Virus record (IMG/VR): IMGVR_UViG_3300036770_004723
Coordinates: 222,585-286,584 of that record
Length of the DNA: 64,000 nucleotides
Direction: 5' to 3' (one strand)
Below, piece by piece: positions 5,287 to 56,354 of the stretch (its first letter is position 1; each line of letters starts with the position of its first letter). The notes beneath the pieces are model-generated. The model saw only the letters and a program-made list of their open reading frames with translations. It was not told where the DNA came from and did no database searches. Both the position numbers and the translations under genes were made by a program.

Positions 5287-5534
5287 TTTCTATCCTTCCA
5301 TTTTGCGAAGTCGTCAATTTGTTTGAATATTTGGTCAGCACTAAAGTCAAATTCTTTGGAAGGTATTATGATAGTTCCCATTGATGTAGCTAAAGGATCT
5401 GCTTCATAGAAAGGTATGAAAAGTCGTGCCTCTTTCTCATACATAACTATCATAAAAACATTAGAACTTAATCTACCTTTAAACCTGCTTTCTATCAGGC
5501 TTTTAAGTTTGTTTAACTCTAATAATATACTCAT
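5283..5534 (-). CDS. hypothetical protein
   Basis: ATGA-coupled ORF. Confidence 0.7.
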   Translation of the reverse strand: MSILLELNKLKSLIESRFKGRLSSNVFMIVMYEKEARLFIPFYEADPLATSMGTIIIPSKEFDFSADQIFKQIDDFAKWKDRK

Positions 5535-6676
5535 GATTCGCCCTTGTTAATCAAGTCTACTCGATCCATTAGATCTTGGGCTATTTCTTCAGCATCGTTA
5601 TCATTTAACATTGAGTCCAGTGTCGAACAGAAATCATGAATTTCGTACACAAGGTCATCAAATTTATTATTTGTTTCGTCAAAATTAAAACATGAAATGT
5701 GTGCTTCAAATCCGGCAGCTTGTGGGTGGCCACCTCCGCCCATGTCAATTGCAATTGTATTAATTACAACATCATTCTTAGATCGTAAGCTTACTTTACA
5801 CATGCCTTCACTTAGTATGGTAATGGCTGCACCTATATGATTAGTTTCCGTGAATAGAATATTACAGGCTTCGGATCTAAATGATTGAGGTAAATTTACA
5901 CAAGGAATTGTGTAGGTATTTCCCGATGTTTTACCTTTGAATGTAAGTAAAAATTTATTTTCAAGTGCTTCATTTAAAAAGCTTTGACGTATTTCTCTGG
6001 AAATAGTGCCCCTATCGAATAATTTAACAAATTTCTGATCTAAACTATTCATGTTTACTGTGGCAGCAGCTTCTTCTATTGTGAAAATAGTTTCATAGAA
6101 GCCCAACATGATTTCATCTGTACCCAACATCTTTCTATGCCACAAATCTCTGTCTTGTGCGTGACGAATCATTCTAGGTAGGTGATCTAAATAATATTTT
6201 ATATTAAAATATCTTGTTGCTTTTTCTGAATTAGTGTAGGCATTGAAAAAAGCAAAAGCTAATGCACAGCCACTGTATTCGGTATCAAGAATTCCCCAAA
6301 TCTTTTTCTCTTGTATAAGATGATTTAATTCCAGAACTCTAGGTTCATGGTGATCAATCAAACAGATTTTAACACCTGTCTCTAGAAGTGACTCAATTGT
6401 TTGTAGGTCAAAAGAAAAATCAACAAGGATAAGTAAATCACCTTTACCTAATTTCTTAGGTATCATTCCATATTTGTACGCAACATACTCAATTGGAATA
6501 GTTGATATTAGTGTAGTATGCTTCTCAGCAATTAAATCACTTTTTCCTGAATGCCATAGGTAAACACATGCAGCTGAAAGTAAACCATCAGTACAATCGG
6601 CATGATAATAAACACTAATATCAGTAACATCGTTCAACATACCTGATTTAATATTAATATTGTTGTTGGTATTCAT
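5531..6676 (-). CDS. DHH/DHHA1 family phosphoesterase (NrnA/NrnB-like)
   Basis: YHADCTDG, VDFS, IDHH, QDRDLW, SLRS and GGGHPQAAGF motifs. Confidence 0.9.
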   Translation of the reverse strand: MNTNNNINIKSGMLNDVTDISVYYHADCTDGLLSAACVYLWHSGKSDLIAEKHTTLISTIPIEYVAYKYGMIPKKLGKGDLLILVDFSFDLQTIESLLETGVKICLIDHHEPRVLELNHLIQEKKIWGILDTEYSGCALAFAFFNAYTNSEKATRYFNIKYYLDHLPRMIRHAQDRDLWHRKMLGTDEIMLGFYETIFTIEEAAATVNMNSLDQKFVKLFDRGTISREIRQSFLNEALENKFLLTFKGKTSGNTYTIPCVNLPQSFRSEACNILFTETNHIGAAITILSEGMCKVSLRSKNDVVINTIAIDMGGGGHPQAAGFEAHISCFNFDETNNKFDDLVYEIHDFCSTLDSMLNDNDAEEIAQDLMDRVDLINKGES

Positions 6677-8546: not shown

Positions 8547-9647
8547 CTATCTTTTAATCCAGTGCCAAACAGGTTCTACGAATATTCCGCTTTTATCACT
8601 TGCACTACCTACTCGTTTCGCCATTCTGTATCCAAAATGGTGGCCTTGCTTTGCACCTAATTTAATTAGGTATTCATTCATAGGATCGCACAATTTATTT
8701 ACGGTGTGTCCAGAATAAACGTCACTTATATTAACACATAAATGACCACCTACTTTAAGACTAGCATACGATTTTTCCACCAAAGGAATTAAAAACTTTT
8801 TTACCCAAGTACTGCAATCTTTATAGCGCAAATAACTTTGGTCCTCGTCTTTACTATAACGTTCAATATTGAAATACGGAGGACTAGTAAAGGCGATATC
8901 AAAATGATTGGAAGGAAGATCTGCTTTTTCAAAACCACTAAAATAAATATTAGCTTTTTGATCCTGCCGTATATATCTACGTATTTGTTTTCTGTAGTTT
9001 TCGTGTAGATGAATGTTAGGATCGAAACCTACGTATTCAACTGCACTACTCGCTAAAAATCCTTCAAGCCTGTCACCCCAACCACTACACATGTCTAAAA
9101 CAGAGCCTTCACGGGCATAGCGATCATATAGTGCTTTAGCCGCACTTGGCCTGAATTGACTAGCTATGTATTTACGCATGGCGATACAACTGGATAATAC
9201 TTTACTATCAACATGGCTGTTCTTAAGACTAAATATTGCTTTTAACATACTGGCACGAAATTTAGGTGTGTGCCAAACTCTCATAGGGCTTGGACTATTT
9301 ACACTATCACAAAACATTCGTGCCTGATGGTGGAAGTGGTTTGAAGCTGCATTGCCAACATTAGAGCTTTCTATATATCTGTCTGATAGTATAAACTTTT
9401 CACTTGGGTAGCGTGTAACAACTTGACCTAGTTTTAGAAGTTTTTTGGTATTCAAGTCCACTAATTGTTGGTGTGCATCATCTGCATCTTGAAGTGAGGG
9501 AGCTTTTAAAGGAAGTGCCAGATTATAACTATCAATTAAATCACTTATAAAAGTAATAGATCCTTCGACTCCGTACTTATCAACTAATCTAATTAAATTT
9601 TTGTGATCTATATTAAGTTCGCCGTCATTTATTTGATAATGCTTCAT
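8547..9647 (-). CDS. DNA amino-methyltransferase (N4-C/N6-A, SPPY type)
   Basis: SAM-binding VLDMCSGWGDRL and catalytic FTSPPYF motifs. Confidence 0.85.
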   Translation of the reverse strand: MKHYQINDGELNIDHKNLIRLVDKYGVEGSITFISDLIDSYNLALPLKAPSLQDADDAHQQLVDLNTKKLLKLGQVVTRYPSEKFILSDRYIESSNVGNAASNHFHHQARMFCDSVNSPSPMRVWHTPKFRASMLKAIFSLKNSHVDSKVLSSCIAMRKYIASQFRPSAAKALYDRYAREGSVLDMCSGWGDRLEGFLASSAVEYVGFDPNIHLHENYRKQIRRYIRQDQKANIYFSGFEKADLPSNHFDIAFTSPPYFNIERYSKDEDQSYLRYKDCSTWVKKFLIPLVEKSYASLKVGGHLCVNISDVYSGHTVNKLCDPMNEYLIKLGAKQGHHFGYRMAKRVGSASDKSGIFVEPVWHWIKR

Positions 9648-30339: not shown

Positions 30340-31377
30340 TTATTTAAAATCTCTTTTAAGAACCAATAAAATATTAGGATCTAATTTAAGTCCTTGAGGC
30401 ACTAAAATATTTTTATAGCAAATCCCTACATGTAGTCTGCAATCGTTGGTTTCGATGTTAAAAATATTATCAAGCAAAAGTGCTGTGTGATCAGGTGCCA
30501 TACTCAACGCAATCTGGTTGAGTAAAATTTCGCGATCTAAATTTTTTAGGTTATGGATTTTGTACGATTTTCCAAGAACACCTGCAATACTTAACAGCAT
30601 ATAACGGAAAGCAGCAATAAAGTCCACATCCAATGTAATGCAGTGACTATTAAACAACTTCTTAAAATCGTAAACTATTAAATTTTCTTCTTTAGCATAA
30701 GAATCTAGCTTTAGATTAAAGCTGTCTTGTATACGTTCAATGTTAGCTACGCTATAAATTTGACTGTAAAATTCTTCACGTCTATACGCATAGAATGGAT
30801 TTTCGTCATCATCAGGTAAATGAGCCTCAGCAATCAAAACTTTAGTGAGTTCTTTTTGTAAGTAACTTGAAATCAAACTTCCTTTGACGCTGTTAATGTT
30901 TCGTATTAAATCAAAACACTGTCTTTCATTTACTTGATCTACTCCGATGCCGTTCTGCCTTAAATAATCCAAAGCAGATTGATCGCGGTAATCATCGACA
31001 TAAATTACATCCGTGATACTTCCAAAATTTACAATTCGTTTAGCACAGTTAGGGCAGGGACTACTCATTACAAAGATAACGAGTTTTTTATAAACACTTA
31101 AATCAAGTGCCTTAAGTTCTGTAAGATTCTTTAACTTATTTAAAGCGTTTTCTTCGGCATGAATAACTGTAGATAATGTTTCACCATTTTTTTCAAATAC
31201 GTGATCTTCCCCACTGGCAACTCCATTACATCCGTCACTTAATATTTGCCAAACTCTCCCTTTTAAATGGCCTACTATAATACTGCCCATTTTCTTTCTT
31301 GTTACTCTAGATCTTTGAGCAGCTGCATACATATCCGGTAAATACGTCAACAACTCTTTATGTTTCTTTAATATCAT
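30340..31377 (-). CDS. dCMP deaminase-like protein with long C-terminal extension
   Basis: GCNG, HAEENA and SPCPNCA Zn motifs, DDYRD; extra ~190 aa. Confidence 0.8.
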   Translation of the reverse strand: MILKKHKELLTYLPDMYAAAQRSRVTRKKMGSIIVGHLKGRVWQILSDGCNGVASGEDHVFEKNGETLSTVIHAEENALNKLKNLTELKALDLSVYKKLVIFVMSSPCPNCAKRIVNFGSITDVIYVDDYRDQSALDYLRQNGIGVDQVNERQCFDLIRNINSVKGSLISSYLQKELTKVLIAEAHLPDDDENPFYAYRREEFYSQIYSVANIERIQDSFNLKLDSYAKEENLIVYDFKKLFNSHCITLDVDFIAAFRYMLLSIAGVLGKSYKIHNLKNLDREILLNQIALSMAPDHTALLLDNIFNIETNDCRLHVGICYKNILVPQGLKLDPNILLVLKRDFK

Positions 31378-38239: not shown

Positions 38240-38926
38240 TCAAGTGTTAGTTGGTTCTGGTAAACCTAATGCAATACGGTGAATGTTACTGCGGCGAAAT
38301 GCAGTTAAGATTTCTGCTACTTCTTGGGCGTATTCACGATTACCTTTATGTCCGCCGTTGTAACTGGCAACAACTTTACGCCAAACACCTTTATGTCGTT
38401 TTTCCCAAAATTCAATTTCTAAAATAGCGTGTTTAATAGAAAAATCAAGTTCATGGATCAAACGCGCACACACTAGATTGCGATTAAATTTTGAGTCCTC
38501 AATTTTTTCACGCTGCATAACATTCACAATTTTATTATGAAAAGGGCCGCAGCTAGGATCGTTTAAATTAACTGGCCAACTACTTGCACGGCTTTCTTTC
38601 CATGCAATTGCAGTTAGTGTAAGCTGGTGTCCTGTGTGTGCAGTTGCATCATAGATCTCAAGAATTTTATCCATTTTTTCTTCCGATAAATCATTAAGAC
38701 CATATTTCTTTGCATAAGCAGTGTCACGGAAAACAAGTTCTTGCCTTACCGTATCATTAAGTTCCCCTACGTCAACCATGATTTCTGTACTATTATCCCG
38801 GATGGTTGTTAAAGTTTCGGCCATTTCAGTTACCGTATTTTGAATTGTCCAGTATTGGTAACTCATAACCATCAATAGCAAAGTTGATACAGTGGCCCAA
38901 ACTTTAACGATCATAAATTTCTTCAT
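38240..38926 (-). CDS. membrane-anchored lytic transglycosylase (SLT/lysozyme-like)
   Basis: N-terminal TM; AIAWKESR catalytic Glu, SCGPFH and VASYNGG..Y. Confidence 0.75.
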   Translation of the reverse strand: MKKFMIVKVWATVSTLLLMVMSYQYWTIQNTVTEMAETLTTIRDNSTEIMVDVGELNDTVRQELVFRDTAYAKKYGLNDLSEEKMDKILEIYDATAHTGHQLTLTAIAWKESRASSWPVNLNDPSCGPFHNKIVNVMQREKIEDSKFNRNLVCARLIHELDFSIKHAILEIEFWEKRHKGVWRKVVASYNGGHKGNREYAQEVAEILTAFRRSNIHRIALGLPEPTNT

Positions 38927-38944
38927 AAGATTCTCACATATTAT

Positions 38945-39424
38945 CTAAACAAATGGAAAGGCTTTACGTAAATCTTCTGCGTTCCAAGATACTTCACGTA
39001 AAGCAAATTCAGGTACACATAAACCTGAATCATGATAAACATAATTACCTACACACCTGAGATTTTTATTATGGTGTTTTTGCCAATACCAAATCTCTCC
39101 AACTTCTTTAAACTTCTCAATAGCTAACAATGCTACTTCTTTACTGCAAATACAATAACGATCATCATATCCATAGTCGCGTGTTGGATTCACATAAATT
39201 GCTACACGGTAAGCTAATCGCTTTACGATCAAACGTGTGTCACCAACAGTAACATCAAACAGTAGATCACCAAATGCTTTTGTAAGATCTTCTTTTTCGC
39301 TGTCAGCATTAAGTAAGGTAACTGTTTGATCAATTAAAGTTTGAGGTACAGTTAAAATAACTTCACTGCCTTTTCTTTCAAAAGGACAAGAAATTAAATC
39401 ACCTAGCAGTTTAATGTGCGTCAT
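38945..39424 (-). CDS. hypothetical protein
   Basis: ORF in - strand run. Confidence 0.75.
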   Translation of the reverse strand: MTHIKLLGDLISCPFERKGSEVILTVPQTLIDQTVTLLNADSEKEDLTKAFGDLLFDVTVGDTRLIVKRLAYRVAIYVNPTRDYGYDDRYCICSKEVALLAIEKFKEVGEIWYWQKHHNKNLRCVGNYVYHDSGLCVPEFALREVSWNAEDLRKAFPFV

Positions 39425-39433
39425 AGCTTATAC

Positions 39434-39874
39434 TCACTTTACAAGAGTTAGATTAGGTCTTTTAACTTCAGGCTGTGTTTCAGTTTCTTCGGTAGCTACC
39501 ATAATGAAAGGATTAAAAATTTCAGAATTCTGGTCAGTTAGATCTTTAATTGCTAGAATAGCTCCGATTGGTATACTAAAGTTACACTGCATTTGATCCA
39601 CACTGACAGATCCGGAGATAGATCCATCTTTAATAACGAAAACCGGACAAGCTTTTTGGCTGACATTCAACGTTAGCCTTCCTGAATCAGGATCTATTCT
39701 TGAAGCTAAAGGTCCTGAAATATTTAGGCCGTGTACATCTGCTTTTTTCGCCTGACCTTCATTCTCTATCATTACATGACAAAGAACGTCAATAAATACA
39801 CGATGTTTTGCCTTACGCAGTTCATTTAGGATATGAGTTACTGCAATGTACCTAGCTTCTTTAAAGATGTCCAT
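39434..39874 (-). CDS. sspB: SspB-like ClpXP adaptor (stringent starvation protein B homolog)
   Basis: G.LTLNVS..AC, IPIGAILAI, acidic linker and C-terminal RPNLTLVK resembling the SspB ClpX-binding tail RPALRVVK. Confidence 0.75.
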   Translation of the reverse strand: MDIFKEARYIAVTHILNELRKAKHRVFIDVLCHVMIENEGQAKKADVHGLNISGPLASRIDPDSGRLTLNVSQKACPVFVIKDGSISGSVSVDQMQCNFSIPIGAILAIKDLTDQNSEIFNPFIMVATEETETQPEVKRPNLTLVK

Positions 39875-39889
39875 GAATTACTCCAAATT

Positions 39890-39910
39890 AAAAGCCGGAA
39901 ACTAACCGGC
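39890..39910 (-). terminator. possible intrinsic terminator
   Basis: GCCGG-loop-CCGGC followed by TTTT on - strand. Confidence 0.5.
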
Positions 39911-55325: not shown

Positions 55326-56354
55326 TTAATAACCACACGAAGATCCGCCAACGTAGCCACATCTAACACCGTGAACTTTTTTAACAGATAATCTTTCCGT
55401 ACTGTCACGCATTCTGTTAGCAGGCACTTTATACTGTTTGGTGTAGTCAGTGAAATTGAATAACTCTTTTCGTGACCAATCAGAATAAGCGATTCCATCT
55501 TGGTGGAAAACAACTTCTGTTATTTTCTTTAAAATTGCATTTGGCTCGTAAGCACTTGCCTTTAAGTAAGCTCTGTTTTTATTAGAAAGTTTGACACTCT
55601 TTGTAAAGCATGAAGGACAATAATCCATTTCAGGCGCTTTACTATCTACGTCTCCCTGTTGCGCAAATACCTTATCAAACATCTTTAAAAGTTGCGGCTT
55701 CGCCACTTTACCTTTTTTACTTGAAGCATACGCATGTAATGACTTAAAGATTTTCTTTTGATTATAGTCTACACGAAATACAACATTGATATGCGGATTA
55801 GATAACATTAATTCAAGCGCTTGTCCCATTTCCCATTCGATGTTATGAATATTCTGCTCACAAACAACAAAGTTTATGTGGAACGATCTTACACCCAAAA
55901 TCTTACGGAACTGAGTAAGCTTGTTTATGTCGTACATTGAACTGATACCCATGATTTTCATATTTGTATCCGCATCAAAAGAATGCAGTGATACATTCAT
56001 AAAATCCAACTTGCACTTCAATGTAGTTGGATCAATTAACGTATTTAAAACTGCCATAGTTTTATTTGCTGATTCTAAAAACTGGCCATTGGTTGTAATG
56101 CCTACACGCTTAATCGGCGTAAGTTTCAGAATGTTATCGACCGTGGAATGTAAAAGCTTAAGGTTTAGGGTAGGTTCACCTCCTGACAATGAAACGTGGT
56201 CAATTACATGCGAAACCTTTTTAATTGAAGTAACTAAGTTAGATAACCAACTTTGCTTACTCGCTTTCTTTTCCATTTCTTTTTCAGGACAAAAGACACA
56301 ATTTGCGTTACACGTAACAGGCAGTATTGCCGTAAAGTTTCTTAACTGCTCCAT
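55326..56354 (-). CDS. radical SAM protein
   Basis: CNANCVFC (CxxxCxxC), LSGGEPT, ITTNG and NVSLH motifs. Confidence 0.9.
   Translation of the reverse strand: MEQLRNFTAILPVTCNANCVFCPEKEMEKKASKQSWLSNLVTSIKKVSHVIDHVSLSGGEPTLNLKLLHSTVDNILKLTPIKRVGITTNGQFLESANKTMAVLNTLIDPTTLKCKLDFMNVSLHSFDADTNMKIMGISSMYDINKLTQFRKILGVRSFHINFVVCEQNIHNIEWEMGQALELMLSNPHINVVFRVDYNQKKIFKSLHAYASSKKGKVAKPQLLKMFDKVFAQQGDVDSKAPEMDYCPSCFTKSVKLSNKNRAYLKASAYEPNAILKKITEVVFHQDGIAYSDWSRKELFNFTDYTKQYKVPANRMRDSTERLSVKKVHGVRCGYVGGSSCGY

What the first reader, a model, noticed from the sequence alone, without database searches (positions are those of the whole stretch)
39434..39874. Phage-encoded SspB-like adaptor with intact ClpX-docking tail but diverged substrate domain
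Seen: SspB-like core (LTLNVS..AC, IPIGAILAI), acidic linker and C-terminal KRPNLTLVK. Established: E. coli SspB ends RPALRVVK, which binds the ClpX N-domain and delivers ssrA-tagged proteins and the RseA fragment. The N-terminal half is poorly SspB-like. Inference: the phage redirects host ClpXP to new substrates such as defence proteins, sigma factors or antitoxins, or blocks the native adaptor.
Basis: partly seen in the sequence, partly recalled or inferred. Interest (0 to 1): 0.65.

Follow-up and report, generated by a model that had tools for sequence, protein, structure and literature searches.

The report
Jumbo-phage SspB-like ClpXP adaptor
An uncultured 287-kb phage carries a small, very diverged copy of the bacterial SspB adaptor that keeps the short tail used to dock on the host ClpX unfoldase, but most residues that mark the cargo groove and dimer interface of bacterial SspB are replaced; similar genes are already annotated in other jumbo phages, and none has been tested.

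Summary

**What it is.** It is a remote but secure member of the SspB superfamily.
- Pfam's SspB model misses it.
- A 13-member family profile hits solved SspB chains at E 2.9e-9.
- hhalign against 32 non-redundant bacterial SspBs gives 98.9 %, E 3.5e-17.
- The AlphaFold model superposes on SspB over the whole domain, N-terminal half included (Z 14.4, rmsd 2.1 Å, 107 of 111 residues).

**The tail.** KRPNLTLVK aligns with natural SspB tails such as RPALRVVK and Shewanella-type HLTLVK. It is conserved in 12 of 13 family members although the linker varies freely.

**What differs.** Only 11 of 48 positions strongly conserved in bacterial SspB are kept. The clade has its own conserved residues, an extra β-hairpin and a short linker.

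**Most likely function (inferred).** A tethering adaptor that docks on host ClpX and presents a cargo other than, or in addition to, the canonical ssrA tag. Rivals are ordinary ssrA delivery or a ClpX N-domain decoy. Binding was not shown; the complex prediction gave no answer.

**Novelty.** SspB-like genes are already annotated in many jumbo phages (phiKZ, RAY, pf16). This is a new, unusually diverged member of a known but functionally untested kind.

The parts
39434..39874 (-). CDS of the SspB-like adaptor (146 aa, P0001; stop codon at 39434-39436)
   Evidence: It is single copy in the genome.
39503..39874 (-). SspB-type folded domain, residues 1-124: helix 3-21 followed by a β-sandwich
   Evidence: AF2 model with pLDDT 83. 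Foldseek's top 19 PDB hits are all SspB. VIA-align gives Z 14.4, rmsd 2.1 Å, 107/111 aligned to 1ou9_B.
39503..39688 (-). Sequence-conserved SspB core, residues 63-124, equivalent to E. coli SspB 47-108; holds LTLNVS..ACP and IPIGAILAI
   Evidence: hhalign Prob 98.9, E 3.5e-17. PDB profile hits at E 2.9e-9. PHROG 8945 'SspB-like' at E 9.5e-6.
39725..39778 (-). Clade-specific insertion, about residues 33-50, modelled as an extra β-hairpin; absent from bacterial SspB
   Evidence: Global hhalign shows an 11-residue gap in SspB at this place. Model strands E33-38 and E41-47.
39464..39502 (-). Short, acidic, low-confidence linker, residues 125-137
   Evidence: pLDDT is 52-60 over this stretch and below 50 at residues 128-135. 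The linker is variable in the family. There are 26 residues after the F104 equivalent, against 33-69 in 32 bacterial SspBs.
39437..39463 (-). XB-type C-terminal tail KRPNLTLVK, residues 138-146; putative ClpX N-domain docking peptide
   Evidence: It aligns with RPALRVVK in the global hhalign. L142 and V145 are each kept in 12 of 13 members. It matches natural tails in 77 bacterial SspBs. It is unique among 834 genome ORFs.
39881..39884 (-). Ribosome-binding site GGAG, 6 nt upstream of the ATG
   Evidence: TGGAG is invariant upstream of the orthologues in L003, L011 and L002.
39894..39910 (-). GC hairpin followed by a T-run between the upstream gene and the adaptor gene (terminator-like)
   Evidence: A different-sequence hairpin plus T-run sits at the same place in L011.
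38945..39424 (-). Downstream gene (159 aa, P0030), 9 nt after the adaptor's stop; a possible functional partner, function unknown
   Evidence: It is adjacent in the window, L003 and L011/L012, and in the distant L002, where it is 60 % identical while the adaptor is 34 %. It is not adjacent in five more distant loci. No fold match was found.

Best explanation
The gene encodes a diverged SspB-superfamily tethering adaptor of an uncultured jumbo phage (about 287 kb) from a subsurface metagenome.

Shown by computation:
- a complete SspB-type domain (N-terminal helix plus β-sandwich, with one extra β-hairpin)
- a short acidic disordered linker
- a C-terminal peptide, KRPNLTLVK, of the same type as the XB tail of bacterial SspB
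- that peptide is conserved across the phage clade while the linker drifts

Inferred:
- the protein dimerises through the N-terminal helix as SspB does
- its tails dock on the zinc-binding N-domains of the host ClpX hexamer; the phage has no ClpX zinc-finger or ClpP match of its own
- its peptide-binding groove holds a cargo close to the ClpX pore so that ClpXP degrades it

Most residues that are conserved in bacterial SspB are replaced here by a different, clade-conserved set (ACP at 75-77, G88, F99). In bacterial SspB, conservation marks the ssrA groove and the dimer interface. The cargo is therefore most likely not recognised in the canonical ssrA-tag manner: either a different peptide signal on a host or phage protein, or a divergent tag. 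The cargo is unknown.
For: Homology:
- The family profile against PDB sequences gives E 2.9e-9 to 1.2e-6 for ten distinct SspB chain sequences (H. influenzae and E. coli SspB constructs) and nothing else significant.
- hhalign against 32 non-redundant gammaproteobacterial SspBs gives Prob 98.9, E 3.5e-17. In global mode the N-terminal helix and the tail align as well.

Fold:
- AF2 model pLDDT 83, pTM 0.73.
- The Foldseek top 19 are all SspB, at probability 1.00.
- VIA-align gives Z 12-14.4 for SspBs against 6.2 for the next unrelated chain.
- The ESM Atlas structural neighbour is 'ClpXP protease specificity-enhancing factor'.

Tail:
- 12 of 13 family members, plus P0038, end in [KR]..L[TSR][VLI]V[KQEH].
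- 77 bacterial SspBs end the same way, with lineage variants that include HLTLVK in Shewanella.
- It is the only such ORF end in the genome.
- Tail-mediated tethering to the ClpX N-domain is the established SspB mechanism, and an XB peptide alone binds ClpX at about 65 nM (PMC9963277 and PMC12373786).

Changed groove:
- Only 11 of 48 positions that are at least 80 % conserved in bacterial SspB are retained.
- Clade-specific conserved residues are C76, P77, G88 and F99.
- PMC9963277 states that only the dimer interface and the ssrA groove are highly conserved in SspB.

Other:
- The genome has no ClpX zinc-finger or ClpP match.
- All loci carrying family members look phage-like: dense same-strand small ORFs with almost no Pfam hits (one, Phage_YunG-like, in L011/L012).
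Against: - No binding or degradation data exist. The complex prediction of the tail with two E. coli ClpX N-domains scored 0.16, which the tool reports as no answer.
- The host, and therefore the relevant ClpX and ssrA tag, is unknown.
- Sequence divergence alone does not prove altered specificity. Caulobacter SspB is also very diverged from E. coli SspB yet serves ssrA-tagged proteins (my recollection of Chien et al. 2007; that paper is not held).
- The residue-level ssrA contacts could not be mapped here, because no coordinates were available.
- The linker is shorter than in any of the 32 sampled bacterial SspBs (26 against at least 33 residues after the F104 equivalent), which might limit delivery geometry.
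- The curated family models are not met: no Pfam hit, and NCBIfam 17 bits against cut-offs of 162 and above.
Confidence: 0.6

Rival explanations
1. It is an ordinary ssrA-tag adaptor. The phage brings its own SspB to speed ClpXP clearance of tmRNA-tagged fragments of its particular host during infection, for example in a host that lacks SspB or has a divergent tag, and the groove differences merely track that host's tag.
For: - The architecture is identical to SspB.
- The strand that carries L-N-(I/V)-(S/A)..A is retained.
- Other phage homologues such as pf16 gp18 keep nearly all canonical residues and presumably bind ssrA (PMC5587285).
- Diverged SspB orthologues can still serve ssrA (recollection of the Caulobacter SspB work).
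Against: - 37 of 48 canonically conserved positions are replaced. These include the RPYLLRA..EW helix motif, F72, A74-R75-F76 and the YARENG loop.
- The tail resembles gammaproteobacterial tails. Hosts of that kind have the canonical tag and their own SspB, which would make a duplicate of unchanged specificity less useful.
Confidence: 0.2
2. It is a decoy or inhibitor. The protein occupies ClpX N-domains through its tail without delivering anything. This blocks host SspB, RssB-type adaptors and N-domain-dependent substrates, and so protects phage proteins from ClpXP or perturbs host stress signalling.
For: - The tail is the most strongly conserved non-core element.
- The linker is unusually short.
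- XB peptides alone bind ClpX tightly (PMC12373786).
- PMC5587285 proposed competitive inhibition for pf16 SspB, from docking only.
Against: - A pure decoy would not need a conserved folded SspB domain with clade-specific conserved residues on the groove strands (ACP, G88, F99).
- Substrate-free SspB binds ClpX only weakly in the native system (PMC9963277).
Confidence: 0.15
3. The SspB fold has been reused for something unrelated to ClpX, and the tail similarity is coincidental or serves another partner.
For: - No experimental link to ClpX exists, and the complex prediction gave no answer.
- One family member, P0017, lacks the tail.
Against: - The tail is conserved in 12 of 13 members and matches natural XB tails residue class by residue class.
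- It is unique in the genome.
- Cultured-phage SspB homologues carry the same tail.
Confidence: 0.05

Closest known systems
Bacterial SspB (ClpXP protease specificity-enhancing factor; Pfam PF04386; PDB 1OU9, 1OX9, 8ET3)
   Same: - The same predicted fold over the whole domain (Z 14.4).
- The same three-part layout: domain, disordered linker, C-terminal XB tail.
- The same tail consensus, basic-x-x-L-x-Φ-V-K.
   Different: - It is not detected by the Pfam model, and NCBIfam scores lie far below the cut-offs.
- About 18-21 % identity.
- Only 11 of 48 conserved positions are kept.
- An extra β-hairpin of about 11 residues.
- A shorter linker.
- It is phage-encoded and not next to sspA.
SspB-like proteins of cultured jumbo phages (PHROG 8945): Erwinia phage RAY gp039, phiKZ PHIKZ232, Pseudomonas phage pf16 gp18, Ralstonia phage FLC4-3B gp94
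   Same: - Phage-borne SspB-fold proteins whose tails end in TLTVVK, TLRVVK or LTVIK.
- Shortened linkers (pf16, PMC5587285).
- No tested function. RAY gp039 localises to the cytoplasm (PMC10299810).
   Different: - P0001's clade gives no tblastn hit in 50,697 phage records.
- It is about as far from RAY gp039 (hhalign E 2e-6) as from E. coli SspB (E 4e-8).
- pf16 and FLC4-3B keep the canonical groove and helix motifs, and RAY keeps part of them. This clade keeps almost none.
Engineered XB-peptide degraders (CLIPPERs, split-SspB systems)
   Same: The concept is the same: an XB tail fused to a target-binding module tethers a chosen protein to ClpXP (PMC12373786).
   Different: Those are synthetic. 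Here a natural phage protein might do the same, but no target is known.

Membership tests
SspB (Pfam PF04386 / NCBIfam ClpXP protease specificity-enhancing factor) | Score above the curated family threshold | tested here: not met
   - Pfam gives no hit even at E 10.
- The genome-wide PF04386 search finds none.
- The best NCBIfam score is 17.2 bits against a cut-off of 162.
- Kin reach at most 20.1 bits against a cut-off of 27.
SspB superfamily (remote homology) | Significant profile-level similarity to SspB and to nothing else | tested here: met
   - The PDB profile search finds ten SspB chains at E 2.9e-9 to 1.2e-6, and the next hit is at E 0.4.
- hhalign gives 98.9 %, E 3.5e-17.
SspB superfamily | SspB fold: N-terminal helix packed on a small β-sandwich | tested here: met
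   - On a predicted model (pLDDT 83), VIA-align gives Z 14.4, rmsd 2.1 Å and 107/111 residues, spanning model residues 1-127.
- All twelve entries scoring Z 11.9 or more are SspB or SspB orthologues, and the next is at 6.2.
SspB-type tethering adaptor | C-terminal XB peptide (L-x-Φ-V-K preceded by basic residues and Pro) at the end of a flexible linker | tested here: met
   - KRPNLTLVK aligns to GRPALRVVK.
- The tail is conserved in 12 of 13 kin.
- The pattern is the same in 77 bacterial SspBs.
- The linker is disordered and variable.
SspB-type tethering adaptor | Physical binding of the tail to the ClpX N-domain | tested here: inconclusive
   Complex prediction with two E. coli ClpX residues 1-62 plus tail residues 112-146 scored 0.16, which the tool reports as 'no answer'. 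This needs a bench test.
SspB-type tethering adaptor | Homodimer through the N-terminal helix | not tested
   A helix at residues 3-21 is present in the model. The canonical interface residues are not conserved. No oligomer prediction was run.
Canonical SspB (ssrA-tag adaptor) | Conserved ssrA-binding groove residues | tested here: not met
   - This was tested by proxy. Only 11 of 48 positions that are at least 80 % conserved in 32 non-redundant SspBs are retained, and two of the 11 lie in the tail.
- PMC9963277 says conservation in SspB marks the groove and the dimer interface.
- Residue-level contacts were not mapped.
Canonical SspB | Stimulation of ClpXP degradation of a bound substrate | not testable with these tools
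   This requires a biochemical assay.
PHROG 8945 (phage 'stringent starvation protein SspB-like') | Match to the PHROG profile | tested here: met
   E 9.5e-6, 26.4 bits. The match is partial: residues 51-120 against profile positions 38-107 of 149.

The most novel reading that the evidence does not exclude
This clade is a natural viral 'degrader'. It would be an SspB scaffold whose groove has been re-specified to seize a particular host protein (for example a defence or stress-response factor) or a phage protein (the conserved neighbour P0030 is one candidate) and feed it to host ClpXP through the retained XB tail. That would be the first demonstrated phage-encoded retargeting adaptor for ClpXP.
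Probability: 0.3. Interest if true: 0.75.

Novelty: new member of a known kind. Interest (0 to 1): 0.42.

Why it matters
Phages are known to inhibit or exploit host AAA+ proteases. I found no phage-encoded SspB-type adaptor with a demonstrated cargo (literature searches).

SspB-fold genes with ClpX-docking tails recur in many jumbo phages. This clade is the extreme case: the docking tail is kept while the conserved SspB surface is almost completely rewritten.

That makes it a clean test case for whether phages retarget ClpXP rather than merely copy a host gene. [quoted passage not shown]

If the protein simply binds ssrA tags or acts as a decoy, it is an ordinary auxiliary gene.

Tried and rejected
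- **Single-sequence searches.** Pfam gave no hit. PDB phmmer gave only weak, spurious MTA/SAH nucleosidase matches at E 0.12. tblastn of P0001 and of P0019 against 50,697 phage records gave nothing. A pattern scan of IMG/VR gave nothing: alignment A3 was too diverse to search with, and A1 found no relative.
- **Complex prediction.** The tail (residues 112-146) with two copies of E. coli ClpX 1-62 scored 0.16, 'no answer'. This is not evidence either way.
- **Long hits in the exhaustive profile search** (P0006, P0007 and others, 500-2,450 aa, many stretches). The three examined (P0007, P0021, P0026) are LVIVD-repeat β-propeller proteins that match a short β-hairpin segment repeatedly. They were rejected as relatives.
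- **Neighbour P0030 as a clue to the cargo.** Its model (pLDDT 70) has no PDB or Atlas match. Adjacency holds only in the close clade plus L002, and not in five more distant loci. It is kept as a lead only.
- **Neighbouring ORFs from 36.5 to 44.2 kb.** None has a Pfam hit. PHROG gives only an unnamed family, phrog_600, for the 228-aa protein, plus a weak match (phrog_8090, E 0.0065) for the 159-aa neighbour.
- **Relatives of a virus record** cannot be drawn by the genome search.
- **Primary SspB structure papers** are not held, so ssrA contact residues could not be taken from the literature. A conservation proxy was used instead.
- **Expression.** The only run holding the DNA is a subsurface metagenome that is probably its source, and there is no RNA run.
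- **dN/dS** was not computed, because the orthologues are 59-66 % identical and synonymous sites would be saturated.

Full report
**Observation.**
The window holds an ORF at 39434..39874 on the minus strand that encodes a 146-aa protein, P0001.
- LTLNVSQKAC at residues 67-76
- IPIGAILAI at residues 101-109
- an acidic stretch at residues 127-137
- the C-terminal KRPNLTLVK at residues 138-146

A GGAG ribosome-binding site lies 6 nt before the ATG, and TGGAG is invariant in front of the orthologues in three other loci. A GC hairpin with a T-run (39894-39910) separates the gene from the one upstream. A hairpin of different sequence sits at the same place in L011.

The window is the last 64 kb of a 286,584-bp IMG/VR virus record with 34.6 % G+C. 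The only run holding this DNA is a subsurface metagenome, and no RNA run is on record. A 594-aa protein elsewhere in the window has its nearest cultured relatives, at 35-40 % identity, in Erwinia and Dickeya jumbo phages.

**Is it SspB-like? Sequence.**
Single-sequence evidence is weak:
- Pfam gives no hit at E 10.
- NCBIfam 'ClpXP protease specificity-enhancing factor' models give at most 17 bits against cut-offs of 162 and above.
- PHROG 8945 'SspB-like' gives E 9.5e-6 over residues 51-120.
- BLASTP against E. coli SspB gives 21 % identity over 58 residues.
- PDB phmmer finds only chance matches.

The word-index search found two close kin. The exhaustive HMMER search with their profile found about ten more small proteins of 140-165 aa that match end to end. 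The long multi-stretch hits in that search are not relatives: the three examined are LVIVD-repeat propeller proteins.

A 13-member alignment (A3) changes the picture:
- Its profile hits ten distinct SspB chain sequences in the PDB at E 2.9e-9 to 1.2e-6, and nothing else below 0.4.
- I collected 80 gammaproteobacterial sspB loci. From these I made a non-redundant alignment of 32 sequences.
- hhalign of A3 against that alignment gives Prob 98.9 %, E 3.5e-17 for residues 63-124 against SspB 47-108.
- In global mode the N-terminal helix and the C-terminal tail align as well, with an 11-residue insertion in the phage clade.

**Is it SspB-like? Fold.**
- The AlphaFold2 model built on A3 has mean pLDDT 83 and pTM 0.73. 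Helix 3-21 is followed by β-strands, and confidence is low only in the linker.
- Foldseek against the PDB returns SspB chains (H. influenzae, E. coli, Caulobacter, Agrobacterium) as all 19 significant hits, at probability 1.00.
- VIA-align gives Z 14.4, rmsd 2.1 Å and 107 of 111 residues for 1ou9_B, spanning model residues 1-127. All SspBs score Z 11.9-14.4, and the next unrelated chain scores 6.2.
- The ESM Atlas structural neighbour is a 'ClpXP protease specificity-enhancing factor' cluster.

So the N-terminal half is poorly SspB-like in sequence but is predicted to be a complete SspB N-terminal helix and strands. It carries one additional β-hairpin at about residues 33-47.

**The tail.**
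Twelve of the 13 family members end in a basic patch followed by L-[TSR]-[VLI]-V-[KQEH]. L142 and V145 are each conserved in 12 of 13 members, while the preceding linker has no conserved column. A further orthologue found by synteny, P0038, ends in HLTLVQ.

The 77 complete bacterial SspBs I extracted end the same way, with lineage-specific variants:
- RPALRVVK or RPSLRVVK in Enterobacterales
- HLTLVK or HLTVVK in Shewanella
- PTLTVVK in Salinivibrio and Paraglaciecola
- PNLKVIK in Idiomarina

P0001's NLTLVK falls within this natural range and is closest to the Shewanella type. That is a weak hint about the host and nothing more.

Among 834 six-frame ORFs of at least 60 aa in the phage genome, only this one ends in such a motif. 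It is established that this tail tethers SspB to the ClpX N-domain and that tail-less SspB binds ClpX very weakly (PMC9963277). An XB peptide alone binds ClpX at about 65 nM (PMC12373786).

I tried to test binding in silico, using the tail with two E. coli ClpX N-domains. The result was 'no answer' and counts neither way.

The phage has no ClpX zinc-finger and no ClpP match. It has only a sub-threshold AAA_2 match elsewhere in the genome. Any ClpXP involved would therefore be the host's.

**What differs from bacterial SspB.**
- **Conserved positions.** Of 48 alignment positions that are at least 80 % conserved in the 32 bacterial SspBs, the phage clade keeps 11. These are G49, L53, N54, A59, L63, P80, P86, I93 and F104, plus L161 and K165 of the tail (E. 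coli numbering).
- **Lost motifs.** The clade lacks the RPYLLRA..EW..DN..TP motif of the N-terminal helix region. It also lacks Q50, F72, A74, R75, F76, G78 and the YARENG loop.
- **Clade-specific residues.** The clade has its own near-invariant residues instead: C76, P77, G88 and F99, and often C97.
- **What this implies.** PMC9963277 reports that only the dimer interface and the ssrA-binding groove are highly conserved in SspB. The replaced positions are therefore largely those surfaces. This is a proxy. I could not map the crystallographic contacts, because the primary structure papers are not held and no coordinates were available.
- **Linker.** It is short: 26 residues follow the F104 equivalent, against 33-69 in the bacterial sample.

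**Context.**
- **Dense ORFans.** The gene lies in a run of same-strand ORFs with no Pfam hits.
- **Conserved trio in related phages.** The trio is the adaptor, a 159-aa protein (P0030) that starts 9 nt after the adaptor's stop, and a 228-aa protein with an N-terminal hydrophobic segment and a phrog_600/SLT-like domain. It is conserved in related phage contigs: L003 at 66, 77.5 and 87 % identity, and L011/L012.
- **A distant locus keeps the pair.** In L002 the adaptor is only 34 % identical, while the ORF 260 nt downstream is 60 % identical to P0030's C-terminal 114 residues.
- **Where the link fails.** Five more distant family loci have unrelated downstream genes. Short P0030 relatives also occur elsewhere without an adaptor.
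- **P0030 itself.** It has no recognisable fold. I keep it as a candidate partner only.
- **Copy number.** The adaptor is single copy in the genome.

**Comparison with what is known.**
Phage SspB homologues are not new.
- tblastn of E. coli SspB finds 78 phage records. They include phiKZ-like phages (PHIKZ232), Erwinia Agricanvirus phages (RAY gp039, annotated 'SspB-like'), pf16 gp18, Ralstonia FLC4-3B and Xanthomonas LucasX.
- BFVD holds at least 17 viral SspB-fold models (E ≤ 0.001) that match my model.
- The nearest ESM Atlas feature clusters are largely viral, with 71-227 members.
- Their tails are of the same type: RAY ends in KKPTLTVVK, pf16 in KKPTLRVVK, and phiKZ has PKLTVIK followed by GGKK.
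- The literature offers only modelling for pf16 (PMC5587285) and cytoplasmic localisation for RAY gp039 (PMC10299810). I found no functional study.

P0001's clade is separate from these. It gives no tblastn hit in cultured phages. It is about as far from RAY gp039 (hhalign E 2e-6) as from E. coli SspB (E 4e-8). It is also the most stripped of canonical residues.

**Mechanism and rivals.**
- **Best explanation, confidence 0.6.** A dimeric SspB-type tethering adaptor docks on host ClpX N-domains through its XB tail and presents a cargo to ClpXP. Its groove no longer looks like the canonical ssrA groove.
  - Shown: homology, predicted fold, tail conservation, and loss of canonical conserved residues.
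  - Inferred: dimerisation, ClpX binding, delivery, and altered specificity.
- **Rival 1, 0.2.** It still serves the host's ssrA tag.
- **Rival 2, 0.15.** It is a ClpX N-domain decoy. The clade-specific conservation of the folded domain argues against this.
- **Rival 3, 0.05.** It has nothing to do with ClpX.

**Verdict.**
I file this as a new, unusually diverged member of a known but experimentally untested kind, the jumbo-phage SspB-like adaptors.

Interest is moderate, and rests on its value as a clean test case for ClpXP retargeting by phages. 

Noticed in passing
window 38945-39424 (-), P0030: A 159-aa protein starts 9 nt after the adaptor's stop. It is more conserved than the adaptor: 60 % against 34 % in the distant locus L002. 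Its conserved motifs (for example YDDRYCI.S and WQKHHNK.LR) lie in or beside a C-terminal stretch, residues 114-149, that is highly conserved yet modelled with pLDDT below 50. It has no Pfam, PDB or Atlas match.
   Followed up: partly
window 38240-38926 (-): A 228-aa protein with an N-terminal hydrophobic segment and a phrog_600 domain. tblastn finds the domain in 331 phage records (Ackermannviridae-like, Aeromonas and Vibrio phages). They annotate it inconsistently as 'SLT transglycosylase', 'RegB endoribonuclease' or hypothetical. At 87 % identity it is the most conserved gene of the local trio.
   Followed up: partly
L100:3652-4215 and L010:2886-3047 compared with window 38945-39424: The genes downstream of two distant family members are otherwise unrelated to P0030. 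They begin with NGSEVILTEP, which resembles P0030's KGSEVILTVP at residues 18-27. This may be a shared short N-terminal element or chance (tblastn E 0.5).
   Followed up: no
loci L016-L095 (bacterial sspB genes): Natural SspB tails vary by lineage: RPALRVVK in Enterobacterales, HLTLVK or HLTVVK in Shewanella, SHLRIVD in Haemophilus, and PNLKVIK in Idiomarina. The tails of the phage clade fall closest to the Shewanella and other marine gammaproteobacterial types, which is a weak clue to the host.
   Followed up: partly
proteins P0006, P0007, P0021, P0026 and others: Long proteins, of which the three examined are LVIVD-repeat β-propellers, score down to 1e-14 against the small family profile, because many repeats each match a β-hairpin segment of about 30 residues. 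This is a trap for profile searches with short β-rich queries.
   Followed up: yes
genome G000:C1:109683-109991 and 129165-129419 (outside the window): The phage carries two tRNA genes (Gly-tcc and Met-cat) and no tmRNA. A 390-aa ORF gives a sub-threshold AAA_2 match (21 bits against a cut-off of 27). No ClpX zinc-finger or ClpP match was found.
   Followed up: partly
window 5531-6676 (-), 8547-9647 (-), 30340-31377 (-), 55326-56354 (-): Other recognisable genes in the window are a DHH phosphoesterase/RecJ-like protein, a DNA-methyltransferase-like protein, a dCMP-deaminase-like protein and a radical-SAM protein. The rest of the window is mostly same-strand ORFans.
   Followed up: no
BFVD hits: Aeromonas phage phiA8-29 has two separate SspB-fold proteins (A0A1W6DXU6 and A0A1W6DY71). 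Several phiKZ-like phages carry SspB domains fused to long C-terminal extensions of 238-373 aa. This suggests that the scaffold has diversified repeatedly in jumbo phages.
   Followed up: no
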